Below, in pieces: positions 6,220 to 46,300 of a stretch of 64,000 nt of DNA (positions within the stretch are counted from its first letter, which is position 1; each line of letters opens with the position of its first letter). Source of the DNA: Selaginella moellendorffii. Taxonomy: Eukaryota; Plantae; Lycopodiophyta. Location of the stretch: contig NW_003314281.1 of the NCBI RefSeq assembly GCF_000143415.4, positions 2,132,493-2,196,492 of the forward strand. The letters run 5' to 3'. Under the pieces are notes generated by a model. The model had not been told where the DNA came from and did no database searches. It saw nothing but the letters and a program-made list of their open reading frames with translations. The position numbers and the translations under genes were made by a program.

Positions 6220-6220
6220 G

Positions 6221-11289: not shown

Positions 11290-12399
11290 CTTGATATACA
11301 CACAGCTGCAGGTAAGTAAAAACATACATGACAATACGCTAGCCATGAAATTGCAAGGGCCCAAGATGGCATGTGGCCTCATGCCATTTCTAAATGTGGT
11401 CCTAAGCCATTCCATGGTGAACATACCAGGAAGCACAAGTGCCGAATATCAAGAGGAAGCGGTAGCCACACCAAAGACAGTGCCGCTCGCAACACCGCAA
11501 CTACTCGTAGCGCCGCTCGCAACACCGCAACTGCTCGTAGCGCCGCTCGCACAAACTGCCACTCGCATAAACTGCCGCTCGCAATGGCGCTCGCAATGCC
11601 GCAACCGCTCGTAGACGCATAAACCACAGCTCACAACGCCGCTTACACAAGCAGCGCTCACTGCGCTCAGTGGAACCAAGAACATGGCGCACAAAAATGA
11701 TAGACCTAGGAATGAGTTCGAGAATTCAAAAATAACACACGCTTGAACGTCACATCAAATCCTCTGACAAACCAGATCTTATGATTCCTTTGACAAATTT
11801 TAAACTGAGTAGCTTCTAGACTTTGCTGTCGGAGGTTGAACTTTGTCACATCATCGATCCAGCTGTGCCATGTCAGTGATTTGAACTTTGCCATGCCATG
11901 TCAGCGATCCGCGCCAAGATTATTCGCCATGTAAAGGAATAATTATGTTGTGTGTGTACGTCCATTTATGGCAATATAAGGCCACACGCCATTCAAAGAA
12001 TAATGCTAGTTGAGCATTTTTTGGTGCATTTTTGGGTTCAAAATTGCATGAGCCCACACGCTATAAAGTTTACCTGTACCAAAAATAGAAACAGCTTTAT
12101 TTACTTGGGAATTTAAGTGGTTGAGGCATTTTTAAACTTACAAACACATGCCCTACTTACATTCCTTTGGTTGCTTAAAATTCAATAATATTATAAACCC
12201 TTCTTTTTGCATTTTCAATGTTTTCAATTATGGTTTTTGATTTTCGCAGGACCAGCCTAGTAATCTATTTGCATCCCGTCATGTTTATAGCTAGCTTTCG
12301 TTTGTCCCCTTCGCTAACCTGAGATACATCTGCTCGGCATCTGCCTCTTACAGCATTTGCCCAGAAAGGGCATCTTTCTTCACGTAGCATTTGCCACAT

Positions 12400-12426
12400 G
12401 TTTAGGGTTTAGGGTTTAGGGTTTAG
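12400..12426 (+). repeat. Interstitial plant telomeric repeat (TTTAGGG)3; also at 13260-13278 and 35690-35722
   Basis: tttagggtttagggtttagggtttag, in the region between the two transposon genes. Confidence 0.9.
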
Positions 12427-19926: not shown

Positions 19927-20341
19927 GATGGCATGTATTTATTTAAAAATGTAACTTATTATGGCATAGGGTTCCATGCCATTGTATTAATATTAAAACA
20001 CAATTCGTTGAGAGGATTTGCATTATACTAGAAGTGTTACAGCATGTTATTGAAAGTCTACGAAGTTGTTTTATTAATAAGAGGAAAGTAAAGATTGAAT
20101 GGGGACTTGGGCTCCACCTAGACTCGGAGCAACTGAGCCAATATTAAAAGGATGGAAAGAAATTGGACGACGATGACAAGGAGAAGAGAGAGGTGAAGCA
20201 GTGGCAGGGGGAGAAGTGATTGAGTAGACATTTCCTTGTTTAAAATAAAATGGCATGTGCCTCAATGCAGTTGAATTTTGTTATATTTATATACTATATA
20301 AAGGTTTGGAAACCTTATTTTACAAGTGGGATAATGACAAT

Positions 20342-20365
20342 TCCCACTTTAACAAAATAGAGCTT
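20342..20365 (-). repeat. Right TIR of transposon copy 1
   Basis: tcccactttaacaaaatagagctt followed by TSD gtag. Confidence 0.9.
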
Positions 20366-28149: not shown

Positions 28150-29799
28150 GATACCAGTACAAACTAGACGTGCGAAAAATTGGCACCCTTTTACCATATC
28201 TCAAGGCCCTAAGGTACGGAGTAAACTTTCTAATATCCAAAGGCAGCTTAGGTACAACATTGCACCTTCTCGGGCCAAGTCCTCTTCATCTTCGGCAGAT
28301 TCCAGTGACTTAGATCTACGAGCTATGGCGCAGCCACCTTTAGCTCAACCTCAGCTCCATGTTCTGTAGAGGGGCAGTGATCTGCCGACCTTTTTAGGTG
28401 TTGGAACAGTCTCTCCAACATTGCATATCAGTCACTTTGATTACTACTGCACCACAAACATGATCGTCGATGATGATCGTATGTGCCACGACTTCTTGCA
28501 GTCTCTCAAAGGCAAAGCAGCAACTTGGGCAGATTCTCTCCTTCTAGAGGACTGAACAGACTTCCAGACACTGCTTACTTCTTTTAGAGAACGTTTTGTG
28601 GAAGAAAAACCCACAAATCGGCTACTTGTCGACCTTTTTTCGTTCCGGCAGGGTGCTCACAAGTCTGTTCCTGACTACATCACCCGGTTTCAAGCATATT
28701 CGAAGTAGTGTTGGGATTGCAAAGTGGTCCAAGATGAGCAACAGGGGATCACAGCATTCACAGCAAGTCTGCATGGGAACTTGCAGCAAAAACTTCTTAA
28801 GAAGACATTCAGCTCTTGTCGCGAGGCATTTTCATTTGCCTCGAAGCTGGAAAGAGAGCTTCTTGTTGACTTGGGGATTGCTAGAGTTGATTTCGACCAA
28901 GCCATCACCCCATCAGAGTCACCTTGTGCACCTGTTTGCCCATACACAACAAAGCTCGTTGCTATTGAGCATACACCTCCGGCTATTAAGAACTTTGCCA
29001 ACGAGATGCAGCAGCTGAAGGAGATCATTCTTCAGCAACAATCACACCAGGACAAACTGCTCCAGGAGCTAGTGGAGTCCAGGAAAGAGGCCACTACAGC
29101 TCCAGAACGAAGATTTAAATCCCATTGGTGCACTCACTGCGAGACGAACACACATAACACATAGCACTGCTTGAAGCTTCACCTAGAGCTTCAACCTCCA
29201 CCTTCTCAACGTGTCCAATAGCATCCCTTCGCTAATAATTCCATATCGTCTCGGGGTCTAGAGACATATCAGGAGTAGTTGGAGTGACAAGCAACCCCTT
29301 CATCAAGCAAAGGCAAGGCACCAACCTCATCGGTCAACACAATTTTGGTAGTCGAGGAACACTATAGGCAGCAGCAGCAAACCGCAGCCACTTGAGCCCA
29401 AGCGAAGAAGAAGGCAGCTGCTCAGCCTGTCACAGATCCCCCGGCGCCGATTGAGAGCGAATCTCAGTTGGCATCAGGCCCAATGATACAGAGGGTGGCT
29501 TGTAAGCTCCCCTTCAAGTCACTACTCTCTTCTCCTCTAGAAATCTCACCAACAGCTATTCCTATTTTGGAGCCGGTTCTTCAACAGCTGGTTGACACTC
29601 CCATCACCTTTTCGCACCAAGATATGTTGTGTCTTGTCCCGGGATTCGGCCAGCGTTTAGAGGAGTTTGCACGGTCAGGAACACTAGAGAGCACTCTCAA
29701 GAGGACTCCTCAAGAGGTGCACATTGTCGACATGACAAGATATAGTGGAGATCCTGGCCTATTCTTTGTCCTGGTGCAGATTGGTACTTCCCCTTATAG
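28150..29799 (+). pseudogene. Degenerate gag to protease start of a Tat-like gypsy element, interrupted at 29800 by transposon copy 2
   Basis: Gag-like segments, zinc-knuckle remnant WCTHCETNTHNT; continues at 43331; uninterrupted homologue at ~48720-50400. Confidence 0.75.
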
Positions 29800-31049
29800 A
29801 AGCTCTATTTCGTTAAAGTGGGATTTATTCAGTAAAATGGGACTAGGTACAAATTTTCAAGTATTTGAAAATGACGTGAAATTATATGTTTTTTGTCCAG
29901 GGGCTAGACATATCTGGGGCATGGTGACTAGCGCGGTGACTTTATGTCCAGACTGAGTCCATCTGGTTGTATAATAAATCTCATTGTCAAGGTGAACAAG
30001 CCGAATCTGAAGCTAAAGAAGAGCGATGGCATGCGCGCACACACTATTTGTTTGTTCATTGAGCGTGTGGTGAGCTTTCCAAGATGAACATCATTCCTAT
30101 TAGCCAGACATATAACTTAATGGTGAGAACATTTAGATATTATTCAATGTTATCTTTTTCTAACGAATCTAATTGTGAAGGTGTAGCAAGAGGCATTGCT
30201 AGTCTGGAGAAGTCATTTAACTCATTTGACCCTTAGTGTATTTTCATGAAACTAAATAACATTCATATTATTAAGGAATTTCTCTAGTACCTTTTTTTTA
30301 CGACATAGAGGCTTGCATTTCTTTCAAAGGTGATTTAGTAAAAGGCCTGAGGGCACATGCCATTCTATTTCTCAGACCGGTATTAAGATATACTAGTGCA
30401 AAGGGAAAAAGGTATTTGGTGATCAAGTAAATGGCATGAGGGCACACGCCATTATAAGCCTAAGCGCTAGTGGACACCTCCTTTTTGGTACTCTCAGCGG
30501 TACTATCATCCTTCTCCGGGTCAGTTGTTTTGCTTTGGATTGTTGTCTCTGACGTTACTGGGGCGTTCTCGATAGTTGTTAATGTTGCCGTTTGTTCAGA
30601 AAAATGATCACCTGGAGTATAGTATGGGGAGTTTGGAAGACTTATATATTCTACATCTTCACCTATCTCCTTCTCCGTCTCCTTTTCTGCCTCACTTACA
30701 GATTTTGTGCTTGCCATGAGAACGCTCTTCACCCTAAAATATGGAGTTTGTTGTGTTATAAAAGGAAACCAACACACACGCTGCAAGGGAATGATGGTAC
30801 ATAAAGCACGTAAGCCCACAATATGGGTTTATGTGCCATTAATATGGGCCACACGCCATATTATTAGATTTATGCACGTGTGATTGGTAAATGCCTATGT
30901 CACATCATCTTTGTTTTACCTCACACACTATATCAAGCCTCCTCTGATTCAGATTCGGATTGTTCACCTTGAAATAACAAGCCTCCTCTGATTCAGATTC
31001 GGATTGTTCACCTTGAAATAAAATACATTAGAAACTTTGTAAAGGAATA

Positions 31050-34000
31050 TTAATGAATCTCACCTTGAACCCGAGTTATGAATGCTCTTGCTGCATCTCT
31101 TGCATGGTCTGGCAAGGTGATGGTGGCACTCTGCTTCCGCATCCAACCATGCACAACATTATCCACCGATATGCTCATGCTGGGATCCCTTGGATTCAGC
31201 ACCCATCTCTTTTCTAGGCAATCCTTCGTATATCCGGAACTTGGCTTGAACCACTCCACAGTTACATTGAAGGAGTTAGTTTCCGCGTCCTCCTCTGCAT
31301 CAGTGATGCAGCGCCCCACCCATATCATTTGTTTTTTATTACTGGGTCTGACAAGCACGACCATTCCTTTGCAGACCTGTACTGGATTGAATGCTGAATC
31401 CGGCTTCTTGTTCCTCGGCCCACAATAGTGATCCTCAACATCGTTATCTGTCACTGCATTTCCAGAGGACATTGTTCCGCTACTATCTGGTGCTCTGGGT
31501 TCTGGCCAAAAGGACTCTTCCAATTCTTCATATACAACCGGCCCATTTTGGATAGCAGATATAATCTTCTCCCAGTATTCGAGCAAAGGCTTGCACCTCT
31601 GAAAATAGGATTCTCCACCAAACACCAACCCCCTCTTCCAGAAGGCAATATGCTGTCTAATCCCGGCCACTATACTTTCCTGGTCTTTGAGTCCATCCGG
31701 GTGCATCGGCCGTGGGGAACCCTGAGGAATCATAGGTTCCCCAGTTATGGGATCTCTCTTGAAGAGTTCAATGCCGTCCACTGGCAGCCACACTGTGTCC
31801 CATTCTCTCATCTTGTACCTCATCACTGGAGCACCGTCACACATGCTGAAATGAAACTGAAGAGGCTTGGAGTGGCCAATCAGCGTTTCGGATCCATCCC
31901 TGATGTAGCCTCTTACAAACCCCTTAAAGTCTGGAACCTCTGTCAGAAGTGCAGCTTCAACAGTGCCTTTGATGCAATTTTGGAATTCATCGTAGAGTTG
32001 TGGGAGGGTGAGGACATTGGATCGCCGGAGGGACTCTGCCAGGTGACTGAACATGGCATCGACGTCTTCATGAGTGTGCCCAACCATGAGAAAGCCAAGT
32101 GTAACCGTTTCAAATATGCCTTTGGCAACAAGCATCGCCAAGTACGCGAAGACGTACATGTTTTTGTTCTCACTGCCAGCATTGTCTGTTTGGAGCAGAA
32201 GATGGGGTGGAAGGCCACATCGGCCGCAAGAACTTCCTTGAGATTCTGCTTCGTTTGGATGAGGCTGTGCATTCACCGGGCGACCAGCCTCGTCGGAATG
32301 GCATGAGGCCTCACGTGATAACCCTACAATCTGACGGCCAACATATTCACTGGGATGGCATGGGGCCCCATGCGATACTGCAAGCCTTTGCTCCTCCTCC
32401 AGCTGAACCCTGTATGGGGTTCGATCGACAAGGGCCTTATGCAAGGGTTGGCCATTCAGCTCAGTCTGCACACTTTGCAGAGACCTTAAGTGTTTTGCTA
32501 GGGACGCAATCATCATGTTTGCACCCCTGCCACCCCATAGAGGTACAAAGAAGTTCCCATAGTTCTGGGCACCATGCCCATGAGCGATTATGCCAAACAG
32601 AGACACAGGCAGCTGCATGGATGAAGAGATTGCCTTGGGGGCAGGATTGAGTCGAGGTAAGCACGTCTTTTTCTGGTCCATTTTGTCGTGGATGATGCAG
32701 AGGTAAGAGTCAGGTCTCTCCATGGAGAGAATCCTGTTATGATAATATGCAGTCCTGCAGCTTCTCTGCTCGATGTTGTGGTCGAGCCGCCTTCTAACCA
32801 ACGTCTCTCGCTCTTGAGCGCTGCAAGAATTCTTCGACAAAGCCATTTTGATAGCAGTGCACTCGTCACACTTTGAAAAGCTGGAGTACTTTCCTATACT
32901 CACATCCCTGAACCTGTTGCTCCACAATCTACTAAATCTAGATTGGCTCAGCTTCCTGTAGCCATTACTCTAGAGTTCCCGATTCACATCTTCCAATATG
33001 GCCCCCTTGGTATACATGGAAGGGAGAACTCGTTGGGTGTCTCGTGTTCCATCTTCCAAGAGGCGGGTTTTATGTGGTTGCTGCTCGCTACATGTCTCGA
33101 CAAACCTCTTGAAGATTGCCTCTCCATATACAACATGACCCCTGGTTTTGTGCGTACCGTCGTTCCCATGGACTGCCTGTTGAACCCTTTGTTCCTCGAA
33201 CTCAGTTTTGATTCTGTAGAATGTGCTTCGAGGGACTCCATAAATGATTCTCCATGCCTTCATGCAGACCAAACCCCTCTGGAAGACCATGCCCCCCACC
33301 TGATGTTCTGAAGCATCAACAGATGACCGTAATGCCTCATACACAAAATTGCGAGTTGCCTTCCAGGACAATGTCTTGTATCTTGCTCTCTCCTCTTCAA
33401 TAGCATCCCAATCAGCATGTTGACAGCACCTCCTCTTGCAACAAGCAACTGTCGAGACCATTCGAACCTCCATCGCCATTTTCTGCCTTTTCGGTTCGTT
33501 GCTCAGATCCCTTTGGCTGCGCTTTAGGAAGGTGTACTTTCTTTTCCCATGAAGAGATGTTCTGTCATCAGTTGTAGTGGTGTTTGATTGTGAATCCTTC
33601 ACATTCTCAAACACTAAGTGCCCCAATTTCCACCGCACAATGCTTCCAATAGTCAGACTGTTTTCTTCTGTGTCAACAACCTCTAAAATCGCAACTCCAA
33701 TATCATCCCAGCCCAATTCTTGATTAGCAACCGCATCTCTTGGATCGACAACTGTGGCTAAGCCCTCAGCTACCACCTCCCCCTCGGGGTTGTTTAGAAA
33801 CACTTTTGCCTGAATCCATGTAGCACGGTTCTTAAGATCCACGGAGGGAACATGCGTCGCACTTGCGCTGTCCCCAACATCTGCTTTCTTCTGAAGATTT
33901 TTCAAGGCAACAACAACATTTACCCGGACGACCATCTCTCCTCGTTCAATAGCGACCACATTCCCATCGAAGACAGTCTCTACTGATACAGCAGCATTGC

Positions 34001-34118
34001 CTTCCCCAAGCCTTTCACAGTGTATAACAAAGTTCCGATCCATAGACACAAGGGTCCCTTTTGCAACTCTCTTCCCACCATTCAAAATGTAAACCTTTTC
34101 CCCAACCCTGAAGGCCAT
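31050..34118 (-). CDS. Sola-like DDD transposase (~1020 codons) with two N-terminal En/Spm Tnp1-like repeats; one in-frame TAG at 32970-32972
   Basis: ORFs 34118-32970 and 32927-31050 are in one frame (REL*SNGYRKLSQSRFSRLW). Motifs CCKRRCC, CMKAWRIIYGVPRSTFYR, FSKCDEC, IIHDKMDQ, LQTDNAGSENKN, FLMVGHTHEDVDAMFS give an RNase H-fold D-D-D triad of the type I associate with Sola/DUF7869-like transposases. Confidence 0.85.
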
Positions 34119-34537
34119 TCTGAAAGTGCAGAAAAGAAGTTAAGACCATACAAAAAATGATTGGAGAATGGCCTAAATCATAACATACCAAACAACCTCA
34201 ATAGCATGAGGCCACATGCCATTATTCAAACATGCTATTGACACCCACGTGAAATTTCGCATTCACAAAATTGGCATGAGCCCTCATGCCATTAGTGGTA
34301 CCACTAATGGCATGAGGCCTCACGCTATCTTTGACCCCTGCTAGCCTGTTGCTATATTCCTTTTCCCTTGCTGCAACTTAATATATTTTTGTGTGCGTGC
34401 TATTGAGGTTGTTTGGTATGTTATGATTTAGGCCATTCTCCAATCATTTTTTGTATGGTCTTAACTTCTTTTCTGCACTTTCAGAATGGCCTTCAGGGTT
34501 CGGCATAAGGAATATCAATATAGACTAGCAGGGCACA

Positions 34538-34565
34538 AAGATGGCATGAGGCCTCATGCCATCTT
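34538..34565. promoter_or_regulatory. Perfect 28-bp instance of the element-wide palindrome (AAGATGGCATGAGGCCTCATGCCATCTT); candidate protein-binding site
   Basis: Self-complementary; ~25-30 variants per transposon copy. The binding function is inference. Confidence 0.6.
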
Positions 34566-37308
34566 GATATACACACAGCTCCGGGCAAGTAAAAACATAC
34601 TTGACAATACGCTAGCACTGAAATTGCAAGGGCCCAAGATGGCATGTGGCCTCATGCCATTTCTAAATGTGGTCCTAAGCCATTCCATGGTGAACATACC
34701 AGGAAGCACAAGTGCCGAATATCAAGAGGAAGCGGTAGCCACACCAAAGACAGTGCCGCTCGCAACACCGCAACTGCTCGTAGCGCCGCTCGCACAAACT
34801 GCCACTCGCATAAACTGCCGCTCGCAATGGCGCTCGCAATGCCGCAACCGCTCGTAGACGCATAAACCACAGCCCACAACGCCGCTTACACAAGCAGCGC
34901 TCACTGCGCTCAGCGGAACCAAGAACACGGCGCACAAAAATGATAGACCTAGGAATGAGTTCGAGAATTCAAAAATAACACACGCTTGAACGTCACATCA
35001 AATCCTCTGACAAACCAGATCTTATGATTCCTCTGACAAATTTCAAACTGAGTAGCTTCTAGACTTTGCTGTCGGAGGTTGAACTTTGTCACATCATGTC
35101 CTTGCCTCGATCCAGCTGTGCCATGTCAGTGATTCGAACTTTGCCATGCCATGTCAGCGATCCGCGCCAAGATTATTCGCCGTGTAAAGGAATAATTACG
35201 CTGTGTGTGTACGTCCATTTATGGCAATATAAGGCCACACGCCATTCAAAGAATAATGCTCGACATAAGGCCACACGCCATTCAAAGAATAATGCTAGTC
35301 GAGCATTTTTTGGTGCATTTTTGGGTTCAAAATTGCATGAGCCCACACGCTATAAAGTTTACCTGTACCAAAAATAGAAACAGCTTTATTTACTTGGGAA
35401 TTTAAGTGGTTGAGGCATTTTTAAACTTACAAACACATGCCCTACTTACATTCTTTTGGTTGCTTAAAATTCAAAAATATTATAAACCTTTCTTTTTGCA
35501 TTTTCAATGTTTTCAATTATGGTTTTTGATTTTCGTAGGACCAGCCTAGTAATCTATTTGCATCCCGTCATGTTTATAGCTAGCTTTCGTTTATCCCCTT
35601 CGCTAGCCTGAGATACATCTGCTCGGCATCTGCCTCTTACAGCATTTGCCCAGAAAGGGCATCTTTCTTCACGCAGCATTTGCCACATGTTTAGGGTTTA
35701 GGGTTTAGGGTTTAGGGTTTAGCAATTCAGTAGCTTGATAAACATGCAAATACAGAACTTGATGCAAAATCCTTTGATATGTCACAATGCCCCTAGGACC
35801 ATAAACACATTTCAATAGAGAGGGTCCTTTCATTTCATAACTCCTTACGTAGATCTTGGTGAAACCAGAGTTAGTGAAGTTAGTTTCTTGTAATCCCGCA
35901 TCTGATTGTGATGTCCCTTTGCAGTTTCGATGGAAAGGTCAATGCACACCAAACTGTGAAATCTTGGAGCAAAATAACGGTCGGATCTATGGCAAATGCC
36001 CCTGAAACATTGTAAGGCTCGTGTGGTCTCATGTGGTGTCCGATTGAGATGCTTCTTTGCAGGGTCATCAAGAAAGACATTGTATACCATTCTGTAAAAT
36101 CTAGTTGCGATCTAACGGTTGGATCTCCAGAAAACTCAAAAAACTCTCGCGCGTGTCAGAATATCCTAGGAATATACTCCTATGTGCCCCTGAAAATGGC
36201 ATGCGGCCCCACGCCATTCAAGAGATAATGCCAGATGACGCCGAGAATTTTTTGGTGCATTTTTTGGGTTCAAAATTGCATGAGCCCACACGCTATAAAG
36301 TTTATCTTTGCCAAATAGAGAAAAGTTTATCTGTGTCATGTGAGGTAGTTACAGTCTTTTGTGCTCGGCATCTGCCTCTTGCAGCATTTGCACTGAAAGG
36401 GAATTTTTCTCCATTCAGCATTTGGCCCTGAAAATGGCATGCGCCCACACGCCATTCAAGGAATAACGCCACAGGACGCCTGGATTTTTGGGTTTAAAAT
36501 GTTTAGGGTTTTTTGGGTTTTTTCAAAATATTTTGGGTCCAACGTTTTTTGGGTTTCTTTGGTTCAAAATTGCATGAGCCCACACGCTATAATATTGATT
36601 TGAGAGAAAAATAGAAACAGATAGAATTTCTTTATTTAGCTGAACATCTGCCATTTTTGGAAATACAAGATGCTTTGGAATATCCAATCATGCATGGTAT
36701 AAATATAGCGAGGGTATTAAATGATATCCCAATCATGATCTTTCTTTTGGATTTCGCGTGCATGCAGTTCGAGGAATGATGACGTTGCGGATTTCTTTTG
36801 GATTTTGCGTGCTTGCATGCGCGCGGCAATCCAGAAATTAATGGTGGCGCCCAAGTCCGAGGAATGATGACGTGGCGGGATTACCAACCGTTGTGACATT
36901 TCGCGCGTGTGAGGTTAGGTTTTGCATTTTGCTTTGTACTCGCGCTCGCACACTCGCGCTCGCGCTCGCGCTCCCGCTCGCATCGCGCTCCCACTCGCGA
37001 TCACGCTCACTTCTCTACAGGTTTCTCGTGTGCATCGGCGTCCACTCGCGCTTGCATCACACTCGCGCTCGCATCGCGCTCGTGTGCATCGGCATCCACT
37101 TCAAGACACACCCAGTTTGTAACTTCGCCGCCAACTCCGCCGCCCACTCCACCACCCACACGCAGCCCACTTGGCGTCCCGGGAGATTTCAGCACCACTC
37201 TCCAACTGTAAGTGGCAGAGTAGCCTTGCTGCTACGATCCGCTGCACACACAGTGCACATTCGCCAGCGAGTCCGGCCTCGATTGTCACGGCCTCCATTC
37301 GGCTTCAA

Positions 37309-40300
37309 ATGGTAAGTCTTTTAGATGAAGTAGAAAATGGCATGAGGCCACATGCCATTCAGTAGCAACATTGGCATGCACCGATTGGGCTCTCGAGTGC
37401 AGTCCGGTTACAGATGGCATGTAGCCTCACGCCATCTTAGGATGCAGCCTCAAGACATCTGATGCAGTGGTGAATGGTGTGTGGCCTCACGTTATTTCCA
37501 GCTGCTAGCTTTTCATCTGTCAGCTCTAATTGTTGTGCATTTTTGAACAGGCGAGGAATTGCGTTCTTCTTCCAGCCACTGTCAATGTGGATGCAGAGAA
37601 GGGGGAGGAGCTCACCAGTTGGACTTTCGGGATGGAAGGCGAGGATCTGATGCTGTACAACACAGATGGTGGGAGAAAAGAATGCATGGGGATCCTCATC
37701 CAAGTGACAGACACTCCATGCAGTTCCATGCAAGAATATGGACTGGCACTTGTGGTAGAGACAGCGTCCGCCTTCAAGATCCACCTTGCACATCCTAGCA
37801 GCTTCCCGGAGGGGGGCAGCGGCTATGAGGAATTCCTAGAGGGAGCTAGGGAGAGGTTGTCCAGGAGGCCCACAATTTCAAAGACGCTGCGGGTCTATGA
37901 AGATCACATGGAATCCACGGACCTCACCTACGGCGATGTTCAAAAACTATATTCCAACATTGAGCCGTTGAGAGTGCCTCCAGTTTGCGAAGCGAAGGGG
38001 AAGGGGGTCGATCTGGAAACTACCCCGAAGCAGAAAAGGGTGGTCAAGCTCAAGCCGACGTCCGACTCTGCTGCTCCAAAAAAGAAGCTACTCGGTGATG
38101 CCATTGCCTCGGGTTCGAACACTACACCCACCAAAAAGAAGAGCCGCAAAGAGCAGAAAGAGCAAGAAGAGGCAGCAAAAATCGTCTCAGATAATAGTAC
38201 TTGTTACTATTCCAACAAAGTATATACAATCGACATGAGCCGTATCGAGATCCAAAGCAAATACAACCACAGGCTAGTATCTGATGAGTGGGTGGAGAAA
38301 CTGAAGCAGAAGATGCTGGCAAGTCCAGTAACACCCGACATCGCAGACGTGATCCCCTACTACCGAACAATGAAGGGCGAGACGAGGTTTCCAGACTTGA
38401 TCAATAGGAAGGTGTTGGACGATCAGAACATCCGGTTCTATGCCGTCTCCGGGCAGCATTCTAGCTTGGCGATGCAACAGATAGTTGTGGATATTATGGT
38501 GGGCAAGGAGGTGAAGAAAGTCTTCAAGACAAGAGTTGTCCGCCTGATAAAAGGCAACTCGCCCCTCCGATCTATCATATACATCTCCCACGCGCAGAAT
38601 GTCAAGCAAGAAACGTGCTACAAATTGGGTCTGCACGAGACATTGGCACGAACACGGAAGCTCTGGGTTCAACTGAAGAAGCCACAAAAACCAGGACAAG
38701 GACGTGCACTAGCAACTAGCGCCTGGCAGGTAAGCCTCGTTGCATGTGGCATAGCATGTGGCCTCACGCCATTTCCATTGCAAGAATTCTCGAGTCTTCT
38801 CTCGAAAACACTGGGGGTCAATGACACACTCAGCATCCATAACATTCTACTCGCGACAAAAGTTGTTTTTGACAAATGGGTAGATGTGCTAAGGAGGTAC
38901 CATGACGGGGAGTTGCTAAACTCAATGGGTGTGGAGGACGGCCGGAAGCCCAATGATTTGAAGCTCAACGCCTTGCGTTTCTCGCGGTCTCTAGACGACG
39001 ACGACCTTCTGACAGTGGCTAATGCTCTTCTACTTGGTGAGGTAGTCTTCAACAAGACCAAAATGACTCCCGGCCATATTGTGACATACGAGGACTTGTG
39101 CACGACTCTGAGAGCTCGTGCGCTATTGAAGGATTGGATCTTCGAGCAAGTGGCCGTGGCGAGGGTGAGCATCGACACCACGCAAGAGATGATGGAAGAG
39201 CTGGACTTGTCAAATGAAGACATCGACGAGTACGTGAAGGGGGCCCCCAAGTTCATCGATCTGCTGCGGGATGCCACGAAAAGTAAAGCTGAGAAGTTGG
39301 ATCAGTATCCAAATTTCATTAAGAGGGATGTCGACCGCCGGCTTCAGAAACAGCTCGACCCCGCAGCAGAGGCCTATCGAGAACCTTACCGGGTATACGT
39401 GAATTCGGATGAGGATCAAAGGTGGAGGAGCATCGTTTCCCGCGGAGATGAGCAGGTCAAGAACATCTTTTGTGTGATGGACTTCACAAACGAGGAGATC
39501 ACTCATGCAGACGAAGTCAGCTCCATCATTGACTTAATGGTGGGACTTGCGGAGGTGGAATCTTCAGTCCACTATATGATCTACGACTCCGAATCCTATC
39601 ACAAGTTCTGGAAGGCCTTGAACGAGGTGAAGGCTCGGTTGAAAGGCAAGGAGATGCGGGAGATCCATGGGATAATGGCTAAGAAGAAGATACCGATGAA
39701 TGTCCGCATCTTCACAGTCGCCCTTGTTATTGGTCCTGCAGCAGAGTGGGACTGGAGTGACTTCCCAGCTTCGTTCAACAAAGCCGATCGAATTGATCTG
39801 AGGGAGGTCAATTTACCCGTGCCTGAGGAACTGAAGACGGCTATGGAGCTTTCGAATCCAAAGAAAGCTCCAGGTGCAGCATGGGAAATGCTCAGCTGGG
39901 TCTTCAACGCAATAGCGGGTGACTCCAAGGGCAAATGCGTTGTCGAGTACAACTGCGGCGGACTATTCTTTCGAGCCGCACTACTCAAGGGTGTCCGGTG
40001 TGTTGCGGTGACAAACTCCATTGAAGAGGTGACTTCAATGGAGCATATAATTACAGTTGCCAAAGAAAAACAGTATTTTCTCTGCGAACCTGGTGAGTAC
40101 GCACTTTAAGTTTAAATGTTATCTCATAAGCTCTGTATGCAGGAGCGTGGCCACCCCCAGATGCTGAAACGGCGTTAACAGCTACTGATGTTAGGCCGAG
40201 GTCACAACCTGCACAAGGTAAGGTCACGTGAGGCCTCACGCCATTTTGATTATAGATCGTTGTGAATATTTAGACACGAGGACTGAAAAGCGCACTGGTG

Positions 40301-42899
40301 GCGCGTCGAAGAAGGACAAACAGACAAGCAATAGGAAAAAAGGAGGTACAAATTATATTTGCAATGGCGTGTGGTCTCATGCCATTCCTTGCAGGAGACA
40401 CTTCTTCAAAGGCAAAACAGGCAAGCACCAGCCAAGCTCAAACTGACAGTGGTCATAAAAAGCGAAAGCACGTTGGACAGTCGTCGGGATCAGAGGCGTT
40501 TGATTCGAAAAGGAAGAAGGGCAACGAAAAGATGATAGGTAATGCCTCGCGGTTATGGCGTGTGTGCTCATGCCATTCATTGCAGATCAAGGGCTGAGTG
40601 AAAGCAGCCAGTCACCACCTCATGACTCAGATTCCTATGGCGGACTCCCCTTCCCCAATCTCAATGGAGAGGTACAATGGATGAGGGAAGCTTTTCAAGG
40701 CAGGGCCACGTTTTTCTCATCTCGTCGTCTTCGAAGGGTGCAAGAACGTGCAGAAACCATGTTAAGACAGTCGGGTGAGGATACGGTCCTAGGTCACGCA
40801 CTAAAACAGGCTATGGATGTCTTGTATTTTGAGATGGAGACTCGGCCAGATGATTTTTCCAAGATGGTCCTGGAAAAACAAGCAATCCAGCCTGAGCAGC
40901 CTATGGAAGAAATGCAAGAGGGGGATGAGGAGCCAGAGAAAGATAATGAGCAGGAAGAGCAGAAGGACGAAGAGGAGGACGAAGAAGAGGAGGACGAAGA
41001 AGAGGAGGACGAAGAGGACTTGGATGGTCCTCACAATGGTGACGATCACAATAACGACGATGACGATGATGACGATGATGGCCAGCCTGAGGTGGCCAAA
41101 GAGCAGCGGAGGAAGGTCATACAAGACAAACCATCAGGTAAATAATAGTACATCCATTCCTAACCTTTTACCATTTCTAACATTGTCCATGTAGGTCGCA
41201 GAAGAAATGGTAAGTAGAGATTATTCAGTTGAATTAAGATACAAACTCTAGCCTTTAGTGTCGAGGAAGGATAGTGCCAAGCAAGGGTCGAAACGTATGT
41301 CCAATCCTTCAGAATCAGCAGTGCGCCCAAGTGATATCGGTCCTAGTTCCTCAATAGCAGTTGATGGTAAATACAGTATAGTCGATTCAATGTGCTAATG
41401 AGTTTGTTTTTAGTAGCACGGGAGGATACCATCTCAATCGAAGGGAGATATTTGGACATGCATATGGATCCGCCAGTGGACTCTACTTGCCTGCAAGAGT
41501 CATCAGAGCTGGTGGAGGCTACTATCCATATCAACGCCAAGCAAGCTGACCACGCTCCACTTGATGCTACCCATACCACTGAGTCAATCTTGTCCACGTA
41601 TCCAACTGACGGTGACCAGGCGCTATTGGACCCGCATGAGGCCGCCCCAGCCGCCGAGCCGGTCGTATCCTCATTTCCAACGTGTGCCCAATCGTCTGAC
41701 TACGCGCCGTTGGAACCTCCCTACACCGCCCCTGCTGCCTGTTCGGTCATGTCCACTTTGCCAACGGAGGCACCAGCTGAAATGGCGTGTGATCACACGC
41801 CATCGGAACCACCCCATGCCACTGTTGAGCCAGTTGTACCAGAGTCTACAGCTGAAATGGCATGTGCCCACACGCCATCGGATGCGATTGACCCCACATT
41901 GCAGAGGAGAGTATTTCCGCCCTTCACGTTTCCTCGACCAAAACCCTCTGAACGACCATCGGGAGCACCATTCGCTAATATTGTAGATGGTAAAATTGAC
42001 TTGTACCATTTTTTATGCTAACGCATTTCATTTCAGAGTCACGGCGAAAGTACTGTATCGTTTTTGATCTGAACGGTGTCCTTTTCTCCCATGAGCGTGG
42101 CTCGTCCTCGAATGTCACTGCACCCTCCAAAGCCTGCGGTCGCAAGTTGGTCAAAAGAGACAGATTCACATTAATCACACGGGAGAAACTGCGGGATCTA
42201 ATAATGACCATGCGACACTTAAAACAGAGGGCCGGGTTCAATTTGCAATTGGGAGTTTGGACATCCATGATGCGCCACAATGCATTAACGTTGCTACAGA
42301 TGATGCACGATCAGACGCGAGTAATATTACCATTTGACTTTCTCCTAATGCAGGAGGATTGCTTGACTATGGTCCATGTGAGGGGTAGCAAGCCCATCTT
42401 CGTCAAGGCAGAGGCTGTAGTGATGAACCGGACTGCTAGGTCAAGTGAAATCCTCATCATCGATGACTCGCCGATTAAAACTGCAGCGAACACGCACACA
42501 TATGCAGTGCACCCCATCTCTTGCAGTATGGAAACTAGGGAGAAGAAACCGTATGTTCTGGGGGACCTTGCAAAACGGCTTGAAGCGATGGTGATAGAGA
42601 ACCGGCCAGTCCAGGAGGTGGCTGCAGAAATCAACCAAATGGCAGATGGAACGGTATATCAGAAGCCATTTGATCGGACAGACACCAGTCATCATTTATG
42701 GCATGTATATTGTCTAGCCAAGCACTATCCGCATCTCCATAATCTGCTCAACCGGATGGGTTCTTCGACCACTGAACATGAGCGTGGACGTATTAGAGAA
42801 GAGATGGCATTACTATTGGGTTTAAATCCTGATAGTGTGGAGAGTGATGAAATTCCAAGATTATTGTATAGGCGTTGGAGGCAAAAAATAACAGTCTGA
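37309..42899 (+). CDS. Intact spliced cargo gene (~1630-1650 aa): ParB/Srx-like domain, degenerate N6/N4-MTase-like fold, acidic low-complexity region, FCP1/NIF HAD-phosphatase domain
   Basis: Predicted exons 37309-37311, 37551-40092 (an in-frame 54-nt intron at 38730-38783 has a mutated acceptor), 40143-40217, 40274-40345, 40395-40538, 40586-41137, 41195-41209, 41259-41366, 41414-41989, 42037-42899 = 4950 nt with no internal stop. Motifs NHRLVSDEWVEKLKQKM...FYAVSGQHSSLAM; KGKCVVEYNCGGLFFRAALLKGVRCVAV; IVFDLNGVL...GVWTS...KPIFVK...ILIIDDSPIK. Confidence 0.8.
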
Positions 42900-43330
42900 G
42901 ATGGCATGTATTTATTTAAAAATGTAACTTATTATGGCATGGGGTTCCATGCCATTGTATTAATATTAAAAGACAATTCTTTGAGAGGATTTGCATTATA
43001 CTAGAAGTGTTACAACATGTTATTGGAAGTCTACGAAGTTGTTTTATTAATAAGGGGAAAGTAAAGATTGAATGGGGACTTGGGCTCCACCTAGACTCGG
43101 AGCAACTGAGCCAATATTAAAAGGATGGAAAGAAATTGGACGACGATGACAAGGAGAAGAGAGAGGTGAAGCAGTGAGAAGTGATTGAGTAGACATTTCC
43201 TTGTTTAAAATAAAATGGCATGTGCCTCAATGCAGTTGAATTTTGTTATATTTATATACTATATAAAGGTTTGGAAACCTTATTTTACAAGTGGGATAAT
43301 GACAATTCCCACTTTAACGAAATAGAGCTT

Positions 43331-46300
43331 ATAGGATGGATGCTTTGGTTGGCTCCGGTTCTGGAAGCAATATTATCTCTCTTGAAGCTGCCCTTTCAGC
43401 ACAGACAGATCACTGAGAGCTCCTCCATTGTGCTCAAGACCTTCGCCAACCACATTGTTCCTCCAACGGGCATTTGCTGTGGTGTCAAGGTCTCAGTGCA
43501 AGGTGTTATTTCTGAGGTAAATTTCCTCGTGCTTGACTACCAACGTTTGGGAACGTCCTCTTTGAAGGACTCTATCATCCTTGGCCGCTCATGGCAAGTC
43601 ACAGCCCATTGCACCATCGACAGTGCAAGAGGCAAGATGGAAATTAGTGATGGAACCCATAGCGCCACCTTTTTCAACAACCACGGTAGAGCTCTTTCTC
43701 AGCAAGCTCAGCAGGCTCAGACTAAGATGGCCACCACACCATACTTTCCTCCTGAGCTCACAGAGGCTTTTCTCGAGTTGGCAGTGGAGTCGACCATCTA
43801 TATGATGGATGCTTTCTCATGCAATGTGATCAACATTATTGGAGGTGAGTCAGATAGCTTGAGACATCTCCCAGCTTCACTCTCTTTATTGGAGAGTAAG
43901 GCCAAGCCTCTTGCCATGCCCTCTTTATTTGATGGCGGGGCTTATAGAGTACAGGCCCCCATATCCAGCTTTTCAGAGTGTTTCTCAATAGAGGAAGGGC
44001 TCCTTGATTCATTTCTTGTATGGGACCAACTTTCTCTTATGGAGTTTGATGACACAGTCACTCCAGACTAGGTCTATCTTTCGCAAGACACAGCCGAACT
44101 CAATCCTCCTCAGCAACTATCTGAGGTGTCACACAGCCAGCGTCTTCCTACTAAAATCATTGTGGCTGATGACTTCAAGTGTCGTTTGTCATGCCTTTTG
44201 TTGGAGATGGAAGAAGACATCTAGACACACAACTGGCAGAAAGAATCAAGCCAATCGGACGTGCTGCATGCGAGTTATAGCTCTTTGAGTTCAAAATTTC
44301 CTACCGTGGAGCCCCCTGTACAAGTCCAAGTGTATTACATTGAAACTTCAACACTAGACTTGGACTGGACTTCGGTGGAGGATCTTCCTTCACTTGCAAA
44401 GTACTTGGCTACAGTCCTTGCATTGGACATTGAGCGCTCAAAGCATTAGAAGCAAAGAGAACAACAGACAATGACTTCGGATCCAACAGCAATGTTCTTA
44501 CCAGACTCGCCAGAGACAGTCTTGCCAGATGTGGTGTCCCCAGCACCTTTATTTGAAGAAGAGGGCACTCCTATGATTACGGCTTATTTTGACAGTGCTT
44601 TCTGCCCCAAAAACCAGGTTGCCGGCATTGGAGTTTGGATGATTGATTCTGCGGAGAACAAAGTAGTTGACCTCTCTATCACTTTGCCAGCAACATCAGC
44701 TAATGAAGTAGAGTACTTGGCAGCTATCAGTGCCATGAAGTTGGCCATAGATCTCAAGTTTAGGCGAGTCACTTTCGTTGGAGATGTGCAACTCATCATA
44801 CGCCAATTTACTAGAGAATACCAAGTCCACAAAGAGAACATGAAAGAGCTATGGCAGCAGGCAGTCAACTTGAAGGATGAGTTCTCTCATGTGACTTTTC
44901 AAAGTGTCCCTCGTGAAGAAAACTTTTGGGCGGACAGGTTATCACATCAAGCAATCACTATGATGCGAGAGGCAAAAGGCACATCCTGCTCTTTGGTTTC
45001 CAAGGTCAGGGAGGAATCTGAGATAGATGAGCCCCCTAAGCCCAAGGTTTCTCCTGACTCCAGGGTTCACGCTGTTTTCCTAGGTGATGCAAGGACCCGG
45101 TTTTTATTGCCACATCACTTGCTTCAACAAATGCAGTAAAGCTCTTGGATCTCCTCCACTGTTTCAAGGACATGTTTGCTTGGGACTATAGCCAGCTTCT
45201 AGGAGTTCCCATGGACACAATCATGCACAATATTGTGCTTTCAGAATCAGCCAAACCAGTTCGTCAAAAGATGCGGCGTTTCAGCCCGGCAGCTCACACA
45301 GAGATGAAGTTGGAGATTGAGTGACTTCTGGCAGCCGGCTTTATTTACCCTTTGGAGAGCTCAGAGTGGGTGGCCAATCTCATCCCTACATGCAAGGCAA
45401 ATGGAAAACTCCACCTCTGCGTCGACTTTCAAGACTTGAACAAGGCAACTGTGAAAGATCACTTTCCGACTCTATTTATCGATGCGATTGTGGATGAGAT
45501 GGCTGGACACCGTTACTTCTCTTTCATGGATGGCTTTTCAGGGTACAACCAGATCTTCATTCATCCCAATCATCGAGATCTTACGGCCTTCCAGACACCT
45601 TGGGGCGTCTTCGCTTTCAATGTCTTCCCGTTTGGCTTGTGTAACGTCGGAGCTACCTTTCAGCGCTTTATGACCCACGCGTTTCACGACTTGATTGGAG
45701 GCGCCTTGAGGGTGTATATGGATGATCTGTGCACAGCCTCTGACTCCTTTGAGGACCACTTTGTGCACTTGGAGCAGATCTTCACTTGCTGCCAACAACA
45801 TAGGTTCTCATTGAACCTGGCAAAGTGTAAATTTGGGGTGACTGAAGACTGGTTACTAGGCTTTGATGTCTCGCAGGATGGGATCAAGCCCCAGGTAGCC
45901 AAGGCTCAAGAGATTCTGGATCGGAACCCACCAACCAACGTGAAGCAACTTCGCAGCTTCCTCAGGCAAACGGGTTTCTTTCACCGTTTCCTCCACGACT
46001 ATGCTGCATGTTCACGGCCCCTGATAGCTCTACTACAACACAATATTCCATTTGTCTGGGGTGAGTCCCAGCAACAAGCCTTTGAATCACTGAAGTAGTC
46101 ACTCCGTATGGCCCCAGTACTCCAACCACTAGAACACCAACTCCCTTTTGACATTTACATCACAATGGGTACAGAGGCTTTGGAGTATGCCTTTGCCAAT
46201 GTTCACAGCCTTGCAAGCCACCACATGCAACATACTATGCCTCACATTTGTTCAAGGAGACTGAGAAGAAGTACGTGGATGCAGAACTAAACCTTCGAGT

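What the first reader, a model, noticed from the sequence alone, without database searches (positions are those of the whole stretch)
29800..43330. Candidate new system: giant plant DNA transposon pairing a ParB-like cargo protein with an element-wide array of parS-like palindromes
Seen: a TIR/TSD-bounded 13.5-kb element in two copies, with divergent transposase and cargo genes. The cargo protein has a ParB/Srx-like segment (R..S.EWV..L...M then FYAVSGQHSSLAM, compare ParB GxxR and the DGQHR motif). A 22-bp palindrome is repeated from one TIR to the other. Known: bacterial ParB dimers load at palindromic parS sites and spread along DNA; Arabidopsis VANDAL transposons encode VANC proteins that bind short motifs accumulated in the element's non-coding DNA and remove silencing. 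Inference: this element may mark and coat its own DNA with a ParB-like protein carrying chromatin or transcription effector domains, for anti-silencing or for synapsis of distant ends. I do not know of a described family with this combination.
Basis: partly seen in the sequence, partly recalled or inferred. Interest (0 to 1): 0.95.

Follow-up and report, generated by a model that had tools for sequence, protein, structure and literature searches.

The report
Sola1 transposon with ParB-like accessory gene
A 13.5-kb plant DNA transposon of the Sola1 superfamily carries a ParB-like accessory gene and about 27 copies of its own 22-bp palindrome; bryophyte relatives share this layout but have different palindromes, which suggests a self-recognition system like one recently reported in algae.

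Summary
The element spans 29800-43330, with perfect 24-bp TIRs and a 4-bp ATAG duplication. A second copy lies at 6221-20365. Each copy has 27 instances of the 22-bp palindrome ATGGCRTG-N-GGCC-N-CAYGCCAT. None occurs in the other 36 kb of the window.

The transposase is Sola1-type (Pfam DUF7869; its core matches the curated Ectocarpus Sola1-1_Ec32 transposase). The divergent cargo protein does have a ParB/Srx fold: the AlphaFold model (pLDDT 78) returns only ParB, Noc, KorB, PadC and sulfiredoxin from the PDB. After that domain comes a conserved helical region, then a beta-class DNA-methylase-like domain that keeps motif I but has no DPPY motif. A NIF-type phosphatase-like domain lies downstream. 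It reads DxN where DxD is expected, and it is probably a separate gene.

Riccia sorocarpa relatives have the same gene layout and their own, different 22-bp palindrome arrays, confined to the element.

The idea is not new. ParB-plus-methylase accessory genes opposite the transposase were published in 2025 for a giant brown-algal Sola1, and ParB-like proteins next to inverted-repeat arrays for red-algal Plavaka elements. This is a land-plant variant of that kind. Whether the cargo binds the palindromes is untested.

The parts
29796..29799 (.). Left target-site duplication ATAG of copy B
   Evidence: Read from sequence; identical to 43331-43334.
29800..29823 (+). Left terminal inverted repeat, AAGCTCTATTTCGTTAAAGTGGGA
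   Evidence: 24/24 complementary to 43307-43330. The same terminus is seen in copy A and in L002.
30026..30452 (.). Palindrome cluster 1, 3 sites (30026, 30342, 30431), between the left TIR and the 3' end of the transposase gene
31050..34118 (-). Sola1-type transposase gene, about 1007 codons and no intron detected, interrupted by one in-frame TAG at 32970-32972
   Evidence: ORFs. Colinear with 1055-1074-aa homologues at 37-40% identity. Stop codon.
31803..32213 (-). DUF7869 (PF25273) catalytic core, containing DNAGSENKN ... MVGHTHEDVDAMFS
   Evidence: Pfam E 1.1e-42. About half the residues are identical to the same stretch of the curated Sola1-1_Ec32 transposase (compared by eye).
32298..32376 (.). 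Palindrome cluster 2, 2 sites (32298, 32355), in frame inside the transposase ORF
   Evidence: The sites lie in a segment where homologue P0005 shows gaps of 6 and 21 residues, so this is a variable linker or an insertion.
34119..37308 (.). Intergenic region between the divergent genes. It holds 11 palindromes (5 at 34201-34660, 6 at 35260-36590), internal duplications, a 113-nt inverted repeat (34094-34206 / 34398-34510) and (TTTAGGG)4 at 35690-35717
37309..40109 (+). Accessory (cargo) gene. ATG at 37309, intron 37312-37550 holding 3 palindromes (37337, 37414, 37474), then an open frame from 37551 to the stop at 40107-40109
   Evidence: ATG|GTAAGT donor and ...AACAG|GCG acceptor. 859-codon ORF. 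Homologues in Riccia, Selaginella and unnamed assemblies.
38172..38729 (+). ParB/Srx-fold domain (ORF residues 215-400). SGQHS at 38448-38462 sits at the GERR (GxxR) position
   Evidence: AlphaFold on the 12-row alignment A5: pLDDT 78, pTM 0.68. Foldseek top 50 PDB hits are all ParB/Srx superfamily, and BFVD gives the same picture.
38751..38772 (.). Single palindrome, in frame in the cargo ORF
   Evidence: Lies in a 16-residue insertion relative to Selaginella P0058. Several homologues' predicted proteins end at ...WKV at this spot, which suggests an intron there in other lineages.
38793..39329 (+). Conserved helical middle domain of unknown function
   Evidence: Alignment A6. Its profile finds nothing informative in the PDB.
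39330..40106 (+). Degenerate beta-class (N6_N4) DNA-methylase-like domain, with motif I-like VVEYNCGG at 39939-39962
   Evidence: Family members hit PF01555 below threshold (L001 ORF 2.4e-4; Riccia ORF 1.7e-3). The top PDB hit of profile A4 is M.RsrI at motif I, E 0.06. No (D/N/S)PP(Y/F/W) motif in any of 5 members.
40223..40576 (.). Palindrome cluster, 3 sites (40223, 40364, 40555), in the spacer or short introns after the cargo stop
40395..42899 (+). Downstream same-strand ORFs encoding K/R-rich, acidic and Pro-rich segments and a NIF/FCP-like domain. Probably a third gene. Two in-frame palindromes at 41782 and 41857
   Evidence: ORFs, sequence. Riccia annotates the NIF protein as a separate gene downstream of the cargo gene.
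42051..42497 (+). NIF (PF03031) phosphatase-like domain. The catalytic motif reads FDLNGV (42063-42080), that is DxN instead of DxD
   Evidence: Pfam E 6.6e-6, 26.3 bits against a cut-off of 21.8. Motif.
42934..43236 (.). Palindrome cluster, 2 sites (42934, 43215), near the right end
43307..43330 (-). Right terminal inverted repeat
43331..43334 (.). Right target-site duplication ATAG
6221..20365 (+). Copy A of the same element, 14,145 bp, with transposase and cargo broken into several ORFs and 27 palindromes. An extra segment at about 7351-7766 carries 3 palindromes and is absent from B

Best explanation
This is a giant DNA transposon of the Sola1 superfamily, in its autonomous form, present twice in the window.

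Shown:
- It has 24-bp TIRs and a 4-bp TSD.
- The Sola1 (DUF7869) DDE transposase is on one strand.
- A divergently transcribed accessory gene on the other strand encodes a ParB/Srx-fold domain, a conserved helical domain, and a beta-class DNA-methylase-like Rossmann domain. That last domain keeps the SAM-site motif I but has no catalytic DPPY motif.
- A further same-strand ORF set ends in a NIF/FCP-like domain with a DxN motif.
- About 27 copies of a 22-bp palindrome are spread from end to end, at gaps of no more than about 1.9 kb. They lie mostly in non-coding DNA, and also in frame in variable linkers of both large coding regions.
- Bryophyte relatives keep the same gene layout and carry their own, different palindromes.

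Inferred: the palindromes are the element's own cis sites, comparable to parS, OB or NBS sites. A dimer of the ParB-like accessory protein recognises them through two 8-bp half-sites centred 14 bp apart, and so marks the element's own DNA. The degenerate methylase-like and phosphatase-like modules would then act as binding or decoy modules on chromatin, DNA-methylation or Pol II CTD pathways. The outcome would be anti-silencing or help for transposition, by analogy with VANDAL VANC. Because both arginines of the ParB GERR motif are missing, CTP-driven clamp sliding as in canonical ParB is not expected.
For: - Identity as Sola1: Pfam DUF7869 at 1e-42; core motif shared with the curated Sola1-1_Ec32 transposase; 4-bp TSD as in Sola1-1_Ec32.
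- ParB/Srx fold. The strand-GxxR-helix order is kept, with SGQHS at that position.
- Methylase-like domain.
- NIF domain.
- Palindromes are specific to the element: 54 sites inside the two copies and 0 in 36 kb outside.
- Only 5 of 27 sites lie in the 55% of the element that is ORF. All 5 sit in linker segments, and the three that could be compared fall where homologues have gaps.
- Conserved syntenic module with motif turnover. Riccia L004 has transposase, divergent cargo and NIF gene, with TCTTCGGGACGCGTCCCGAAGA and TCATGGGGACGCGTCCCCATGA arrays confined to 654-13659 of a 22.9-kb locus. L005 has cargo and transposase with GCTTCGCGATGCATCGCGAAGC. L008 has CCCTATGGCCANNTGGCCATAGGG upstream of its transposase.
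- The TIR sequence is unrelated to the palindrome, so the palindromes are not simply copies of the terminal transposase site.
- Independent literature reaches the same model for algal elements.
Against: - No binding data exist. The ParB/Srx N-domain is not itself the sequence-specific DNA reader in canonical ParB, and an HTH after it is not demonstrated here. The Foldseek alignments of 155-165 columns are only compatible with one.
- There is no sequence-level membership in ParBc.
- Cargo and transposase are linked on the same element, so co-variation of the motif cannot tell which of them reads it.
- Riccia copies L006 and L007 carry palindromes but no detectable cargo within 10 kb.
- The A-versus-B comparison does not show that palindromes are more conserved than other DNA. 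The rates are distorted by misalignment of the repeats.
- Positions 6 and 17 of the motif are asymmetric (A21/G5 against T11/C16). A symmetric dimer does not predict that.
Confidence: 0.5

Rival explanations
1. The palindromes are binding sites for the transposase, like the subterminal repeats of En/Spm or Ac but spread through the element. The ParB-like protein does something else, for example NTPase, nuclease or DNA-modification-related work.
For: L008 shows the array directly upstream of a transposase gene. L006 and L007 have arrays with a transposase but no detectable cargo. Many DNA transposons carry multiple transposase-binding repeats (general knowledge).
Against: The TIRs share no sequence with the palindrome, and the nearest good sites lie 100-600 bp inside the ends. 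Internal high-affinity transposase sites along the whole element, including inside coding sequence, would be expected to provoke abortive synapsis. The algal parallels place inverted-repeat arrays next to the ParB-like gene.
Confidence: 0.2
2. The palindromes are selfish or mutational by-products, such as a mini foldback insertion or a hairpin-forming unit that yields small RNAs or short introns. They serve no element-encoded protein.
For: Several sites look like insertions relative to homologues, even in frame in coding linkers. A predicted 47-nt intron (40539-40585) consists mostly of the palindrome. Copy number differs between A and B through indels.
Against: There are no copies in 36 kb outside the elements, and in the Riccia loci none beyond the element span. 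There are no conserved flanks and no TSD-like signature. Four diverged lineages each keep a different palindrome of the same size class. G.U-type compensation shows no consistent bias to the transcribed strand, which argues against selection on an RNA hairpin (my reading). There is no Rfam match.
Confidence: 0.12
3. The palindromes recruit a host factor, such as a transcription factor or chromatin protein. The accessory proteins act independently of them.
For: The Riccia core ACGCGT resembles a CGCG-box, and the dense intergenic arrays sit between divergent promoters (motif resemblance from general knowledge).
Against: The motif differs completely between related elements, even within one genome (L004 against L005 in Riccia). 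That is not expected for a conserved host factor.
Confidence: 0.08

Closest known systems
Sola1-1_Ec32, the giant Sola1 transposon of Ectocarpus (Genome Biol 2025, PMC12477816)
   Same: Same transposase superfamily: shared DN..ENKN ... MVGHTH...D..FS core, 4-bp TSD, termini starting AA. Giant size. The accessory gene is on the strand opposite the transposase and encodes a ParB-like domain plus a DNA-methylase domain.
   Different: The Ectocarpus protein (1104 aa) is described as a predicted 4mC/6mA methylase, whereas here the DPPY motif is absent in all five family members checked. A NIF-like gene and an element-wide palindrome array are not mentioned for Ec32. Its TIRs are 282 bp against 24 bp here. 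The hosts are a brown alga and a land plant. I could not compare the accessory proteins directly, because the Ec32 accessory sequence is not in the text held.
Plavaka (EnSpm/CACTA) giant elements of red algae with PAG2 and PAG3 accessory genes (bioRxiv 10.1101/2025.02.11.637652)
   Same: ParB-like N-terminal domain on an accessory protein. Arrays of inverted repeats in the element. The explicit hypothesis that the protein binds and modifies its own transposon. A PF01555 methylase on a neighbouring accessory protein.
   Different: Different transposase superfamily. The ParB-like domain is fused to a 2OG oxygenase rather than a methylase-like domain. The repeats are tandem arrays next to PAG3 rather than spread from TIR to TIR. 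Their ParB evidence is weaker (HHpred E 0.29) than the fold match obtained here.
Bacterial and plasmid ParB-family DNA binders (ParB-parS, Noc-NBS, KorB-OB) and phage or plasmid ParB-methylase fusions
   Same: ParB/Srx fold. Palindromic sites in multiple copies on the replicon that encodes the protein. The domain order ParB-like then N6_N4 methylase is common in phages; a 'putative modification methylase' and a 'DNA methylase' appear among the BFVD hits.
   Different: No Pfam ParBc match. The GERR arginines are missing (SGQHS), so CTP-clamp chemistry is doubtful. The setting is a eukaryotic nuclear transposon. There is no ParA partner.
VANDAL (Mutator-like) transposons with VANC anti-silencing proteins in Arabidopsis
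   Same: Working analogy only: an element-encoded protein, with short motifs accumulated in the element's own non-coding DNA and motif turnover between subfamilies (general knowledge; cited).
   Different: No sequence or fold relationship. Different transposase superfamily. VANC motifs are short and not 22-bp palindromes.

Membership tests
Sola1 superfamily DNA transposon | Sola1-type DDE transposase | tested here: met
   PF25273 (DUF7869) E 1.1e-42. The core stretch is about half identical to the curated Sola1-1_Ec32 transposase printed in supplement 2 of PMC12477816 (compared by eye and not aligned with a tool).
Sola1 superfamily DNA transposon | 4-bp target-site duplication | tested here: inconclusive
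   Copy B has ATAG on both sides. Copy A has ACAG and GTAG. Only one end is available for L002. Sola1-1_Ec32 is listed with a TSD of 4.
Sola1 superfamily DNA transposon | Terminal inverted repeats | tested here: met
   24/24 in copy B; the same termini occur in copy A and L002.
ParB/Srx superfamily | ParB/Srx N-terminal fold | tested here: met
   AlphaFold pLDDT 78. The Foldseek PDB top 50 are all Noc, ParB, PadC, Srx, KorB, SbnI, Atu1540 or Pnob8 ParB, best E 2.2e-4, probability about 1 for the top 35 and 0.63 or more for all 50. BFVD hits are dominated by ParB, GmrSD-N and DndB-like proteins.
ParB/Srx superfamily | Sequence-profile membership (Pfam ParBc or similar) | tested here: not met
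   No Pfam or NCBIfam hit. Family profile A2 against PDB sequences finds no ParB. Among the members there is only DUF6551 at E 0.13, in one member.
ParB/Srx superfamily (canonical CTP-dependent ParB) | Arginine-rich GxxR/GERRxRA nucleotide-binding motif | tested here: not met
   The strand-loop-helix position carries SGQHS (38448-38462). The family consensus is GQH(S/T), and one member has DGQHT. The topological equivalence is inferred from the order of secondary-structure elements, not from a residue-level superposition.
ParB/Srx superfamily (canonical ParB) | Specific binding to a palindromic site, and spreading | not testable with these tools
   Needs EMSA, DAP-seq or ChIP.
Beta-class N6_N4 DNA methyltransferase (PF01555) | Profile match above the curated threshold | tested here: not met
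   Best scores are 21.6 and 18.8 bits against a cut-off of 26.7, in relatives. The window protein itself gives no hit. The family profile hits M.RsrI at E 0.06.
Beta-class N6_N4 DNA methyltransferase (PF01555) | Motif I (FxGxG-type SAM site) | tested here: met
   A (L/V)(D/E)(F/Y)xxGG motif is conserved in all five members; it aligns to VLDFFAGSG of M.RsrI. It is one residue shorter than the canonical loop.
Beta-class N6_N4 DNA methyltransferase (PF01555) | Catalytic motif IV, (D/N/S)PP(Y/F/W) | tested here: not met
   A pattern search finds none in the window protein, Riccia L004, L001, L009 or Selaginella P0058.
NIF/FCP1/SCP-type HAD phosphatase (PF03031) | Profile match above the curated threshold | tested here: met
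   26.3 bits against a cut-off of 21.8, E 6.6e-6, profile positions 1-126 of 160.
NIF/FCP1/SCP-type HAD phosphatase (PF03031) | DxDx(T/V) catalytic motif | tested here: not met
   The motif reads FDLNGV, so the second Asp is replaced by Asn. That the second Asp is required is general knowledge of HAD enzymes.
Algal giant-transposon ParB-like accessory module (Ectocarpus Sola1-1_Ec32; red-algal PAG3) | ParB-like accessory gene carried inside a giant DNA transposon, opposite the transposase, with a DNA- or chromatin-modifier-like domain | tested here: met
   Direct homology of the accessory proteins was not tested, because no algal sequence was available to the tools.
VANDAL/VANC anti-silencing system | VANC-family protein and MULE transposase | tested here: not met
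   The transposase is Sola1, not MULE, and the cargo has no VANC-related hit. Only the logic is similar.

The most novel reading that the evidence does not exclude
The ParB-like accessory protein and the element-wide palindromes form an ancient, co-evolving self-recognition pair of Sola1 transposons, kept from brown algae to land plants. The protein would act as a eukaryotic, CTP-independent counterpart of ParB-parS. It would coat the element's own DNA and use dead-enzyme modules (a methylase-like domain without DPPY and a DxN phosphatase-like domain) as decoys against host DNA-methylation or Pol II/IV/V CTD pathways. Pressure for even coverage would be strong enough to place binding sites in frame inside the element's own coding linkers.
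Probability: 0.3. Interest if true: 0.8.

Novelty: new variant of a known kind. Interest (0 to 1): 0.6.

Why it matters
Giant DNA transposons that carry their own ParB-like DNA binder have so far been noted only in passing, in algal genome papers and without functional data. This analysis adds four things.

- The fold is shown with good confidence.
- The same module exists in land-plant Sola1 elements: the window's species and the liverwort Riccia, plus a transposase-less homologue in Selaginella.
- Each lineage keeps its own 22-bp palindrome array, confined to the element. That is the comparative signature expected of a protein and its site evolving together.
- The attached enzyme-like domains have lost their catalytic motifs.

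If the pairing is real, it would be a second, independent case after VANDAL/VANC of a transposon that recognises and conditions its own DNA. It could be tested directly, by EMSA or DAP-seq with swapped motifs and by expression in transformable bryophytes.

Tried and rejected
- Single-sequence AlphaFold of cargo residues 201-600 failed (pLDDT 34).
- The cargo ORF has no Pfam, NCBIfam or PDB-sequence hit.
- The word-indexed homologue search with the cargo found nothing. With profile A1 it found only 3 proteins.
- Exhaustive phmmer gave only 12 weak hits. Two of them, P0059 (an RTX-repeat protein) and P0068, look spurious.
- Profile A2 of the ParB-like domain against PDB sequences found no ParB.
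- The middle-domain profile A6 against the PDB was uninformative.
- An 8-bp, hAT-like TSD (TTATAGAA / TTATAGGA) was considered and rejected, because the TT/AA next to GAGC/GCTC recurs at other insertions and so belongs to the TIR.
- A short intron around the palindrome at 38751 was considered. No GT..AG pair keeps the reading frame, so I treat it as an in-frame insertion (my reading).
- The RNA-hairpin reading was checked through strand-specific G.U compatibility. There is no consistent bias.
- Rfam and tRNA scans were empty.
- The palindromes are not clearly more conserved than other DNA between copies A and B. The estimate is spoiled by misaligned repeats.
- The Yuan and Wessler superfamily paper could not be read. 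No paper mentions DUF7869.
- The host species could not be identified.

Full report
**What is in the window.** A self-comparison shows two copies of one element, A at 6221-20365 and B at 29800-43330. They are about 97% identical over most of their length, and their flanks are unrelated. Copy B ends in identical 24-bp inverted repeats (AAGCTCTATTTCGTTAAAGTGGGA) and is flanked by ATAG on both sides. Copy A has the same termini with one change in each, but its flanks are ACAG and GTAG. A public contig from a sequencing run (L002, Logan ERR10900155) holds an internally deleted copy. It joins the left 134 bp to the transposase gene and ends in the same ...GAGCTT. Because the terminal AA/TT recurs at independent insertions, it belongs to the TIR. 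The duplication is therefore 4 bp and not the 8 bp that copy B alone could suggest.

**The palindrome.** ATGGCATGNNNNNNCATGCCAT matches 37 times at 2 mismatches or fewer, against 0.03 expected. A looser scan (5 or fewer mismatches over 20 positions) gives 27 sites in each copy and none in the 36 kb outside them. The consensus is (a)ATGGCRTG-W-GGCC-W-CAYGCCAT(t), and nothing beyond about 2 nt of flank is conserved. The sites form clusters no more than about 1.9 kb apart, from 226 bp inside the left end to 115 bp inside the right end. Twenty-two of the 27 lie in the 45% of the element that is not ORF. The other five are in frame in linker segments. Two lie in the transposase where homologue P0005 has gaps of 6 and 21 residues. 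One lies in the cargo where the Selaginella homologue has a 16-residue gap. Two lie in a duplicated unit of a proline-rich stretch. Positions 6 and 17 alternate between CpG and TpG/CpA forms, and unequally on the two arms. I have no explanation for that. The mismatched sites do not favour G.U pairing on the transcribed strand, which argues against selection on an RNA hairpin (my reading). Rfam and tRNA scans are empty.

**The transposase.** The two minus-strand ORFs (32970-34118 and 31050-32927) are one gene of about 1007 codons, colinear with 1055-1074-residue homologues. In copy B it is interrupted by a single in-frame TAG at 32970-32972. The L002 copy reads through that point. Pfam places the core in DUF7869 (E 1e-42). 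No paper in the library mentions that name. The curated Sola1-1_Ec32 transposase, printed in a supplement of the Ectocarpus transposon paper, has the same core...DNTVAENKN...MVGHTHIQIDQIFS..., against ...DNAGSENKN...MVGHTHEDVDAMFS... here. That element is listed with a 4-bp TSD, termini AACCG/CGGTT, and best BLAST hit Repbase Sola1-1_PPa. The element is therefore a Sola1 superfamily member. Homologues occur in Riccia sorocarpa, cnidarians, molluscs, amphioxus, a sponge and a xanthophyte.

**The cargo protein.** The gene starts at ATG 37309. It has a 239-nt intron holding three palindromes, then runs open from 37551 to a stop at 40107-40109. No Pfam, NCBIfam or PDB-sequence match exists. An exhaustive phmmer search found a dozen weak relatives. 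Six of them share a roughly 180-residue domain with invariant R, P, A, F, G-Q-H, A, R, N, R and P. Adding two Riccia genes gave a 12-row alignment. With it, AlphaFold produced a confident model (pLDDT 78, pTM 0.68). The single-sequence model had failed. Foldseek against the PDB returns only ParB/Srx superfamily members in its first 50 hits: Noc, ParB, PadC, sulfiredoxin, KorB, SbnI, Atu1540 and Pnob8 ParB, best E 2e-4 with probability about 1. The viral structure library agrees, with ParB-like nucleases, the GmrSD N-domain, DndB-like proteins and ParB-methylases. Both arginines are missing in the whole family.

**The rest of the cargo.** A conserved helical region follows, with no detectable relative. 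After that comes a domain ending in VVEYNCGGLFFRAALLKGVRCVAV. In relatives this reads ILDFFSGG or VLDFFSGG. It hits Pfam N6_N4_Mtase below threshold in two independent members (2.4e-4 and 1.7e-3). The family profile's best PDB match is the beta-class adenine methylase M.RsrI, exactly at motif I (E 0.06). None of five members has a (D/N/S)PP(Y/F/W) motif. This is therefore a methylase-like Rossmann domain that has most likely lost catalysis.

**The downstream ORFs.** Same-strand ORFs between 40395 and 42899 end in a NIF/FCP-type phosphatase domain that passes the Pfam threshold. Its catalytic motif reads DLNGV, that is DxN instead of DxD. The most plausible splice out of the cargo ORF reaches a stop after 11 codons (my reading). 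In Riccia the NIF protein is annotated as a separate gene. I therefore treat it as a probable third gene and not as the C-terminus of one giant protein.

**Relatives.** In Riccia sorocarpa locus L004, a DUF7869 transposase gene faces away from an 805-residue gene followed by a NIF gene. The 805-residue gene contains the same ParB-like, middle and methylase-like parts. The locus holds dozens of copies of two 22-bp palindromes, TCTTCGGGACGCGTCCCGAAGA and TCATGGGGACGCGTCCCCATGA. They lie only between 654 and 13659 of 22,912 bp. Some form 27-bp tandem arrays between the divergent genes, and some lie in transposase introns. Locus L005 has a cargo ORF (tblastn 1e-13 to the ParB-like domain) divergent from its transposase, and a third palindrome, GCTTCGCGATGCATCGCGAAGC. 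L007 shares that motif, and L006 shares the L004 motif. A plant contig, L008, carries a transposase 36% identical to the window's, with eight copies of CCCTATGGCCANNTGGCCATAGGG upstream. The gene module and the presence of an element-wide palindrome of about 22 bp are thus conserved, while the palindrome sequence changes from lineage to lineage. Selaginella has a homologue of the middle and methylase-like part among ordinary genes, with no transposase nearby.

**Comparison with what is known.** The 2025 Ectocarpus transposon paper describes, in the 21.5-kb Sola1-1_Ec32, a gene on the strand opposite the transposase that encodes a ParB-like domain plus a DNA methylase. It suggests such proteins bind and modify their own element, and it cites earlier reports from green and red algae. 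The Bostrychia preprint describes Plavaka elements whose PAG3 protein has a ParB-like N-domain (HHpred E 0.29) fused to a 2OG oxygenase, with tandem inverted-repeat arrays next to the gene, and draws the VANDAL analogy. I did not find the following in the library:
- the land-plant occurrence;
- the firm fold evidence;
- the loss of the catalytic motifs;
- the NIF-like partner gene;
- the spread of the palindromes over the whole element, including coding linkers;
- the change of motif between lineages.

**Mechanism.** The gene content, the folds, the motif distribution and the cross-lineage pattern are shown. That the ParB-like protein, as a dimer, reads the palindrome and marks the element is inferred, as is the idea that the degenerate enzyme-like modules interfere with or recruit host chromatin or transcription machinery. 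The main rival is that the transposase reads the palindromes. Linkage of the two genes on one element means the comparative data cannot separate these two readings. Only the lack of similarity between TIR and palindrome, and the algal parallels, lean towards the cargo.

**Verdict.** This is a new variant of a recently described kind, of moderate to high interest because it gives a clean, testable pairing of protein and site.

Noticed in passing
window 35690-35717 (also a degenerate copy near 36499-36515): Four perfect plant-type telomere repeats (TTTAGGG) lie inside the element's intergenic region, between the divergent genes.
   Followed up: no
window 32298-32376, 38751-38772, 41782-41878: Five palindromes are read through in frame inside the transposase and cargo ORFs. 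The three that could be compared sit where homologues have gaps. Binding-site-like DNA seems to be tolerated, or selected, inside coding linkers.
   Followed up: partly
window, the 27 palindrome sites of copy B: The two arms differ at the variable position: position 6 is A in 21 sites and G in 5, while the mirror position 17 is T in 11 and C in 16. The common form ATGGCATG...CACGCCAT is therefore not a perfect palindrome. Some sites are paralogous duplicates, so the bias is only suggestive.
   Followed up: partly
window 7351-7766 (copy A only): A segment of about 420 bp downstream of the transposase gene carries three extra palindromes and is absent from copy B. Many indels of 26-62 bp separate the two copies in the intergenic repeat region (12996-13559), so the array changes by gain and loss of units.
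   Followed up: partly
L003 (Selaginella moellendorffii GL377575.1), gene at 10001-11425: A 451-residue homologue of the cargo's middle and methylase-like parts (SELMODRAFT_409495, with a second copy on another scaffold) sits among ordinary genes (ArfGap, VQ). It has no transposase or palindromes nearby, so it may be a domesticated or relic copy.
   Followed up: partly
L001 and L009 (ENA metagenome assemblies): Cargo-like genes (ParB-like, middle and methylase-like parts in the same order) lie on contigs of 4-7 kb from unnamed organisms, without recurrent palindromes in the sequence available. The predicted proteins of several such homologues end at ...WKV, which points to a conserved intron site.
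   Followed up: partly
L006 (Riccia sorocarpa CM100795.1), 10001-15863: Two DUF7869 transposase genes lie next to each other on the same strand. The palindromes accompany only the second one (13668-18219).
   Followed up: no
window 5524-6058 and 27731-28034: There is a 35-bp tandem array (about 13 units) directly to the left of copy A, and a 12-bp tandem array at 27.7-28.0 kb. The stretch 6022-6219 has inverted similarity to 24464-24650 and 25527-25718.
   Followed up: no
window 53005-62000 and 21160-23700: Another repeat family is present. It has 881-nt arms that are 100% complementary (53006-53886 / 57803-58683), direct repeats at about 4.17-kb spacing up to about 61 kb, and 73-89% inverted similarity to 21.1-23.7 kb. 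This is probably a different transposon with a recent duplication or foldback.
   Followed up: no
window 44471-46098: Retrotransposon fragments lie just to the right of copy B: RNase H-like RVT_3 (E 2e-17) and reverse transcriptase RVT_1 (E 8e-23).
   Followed up: no
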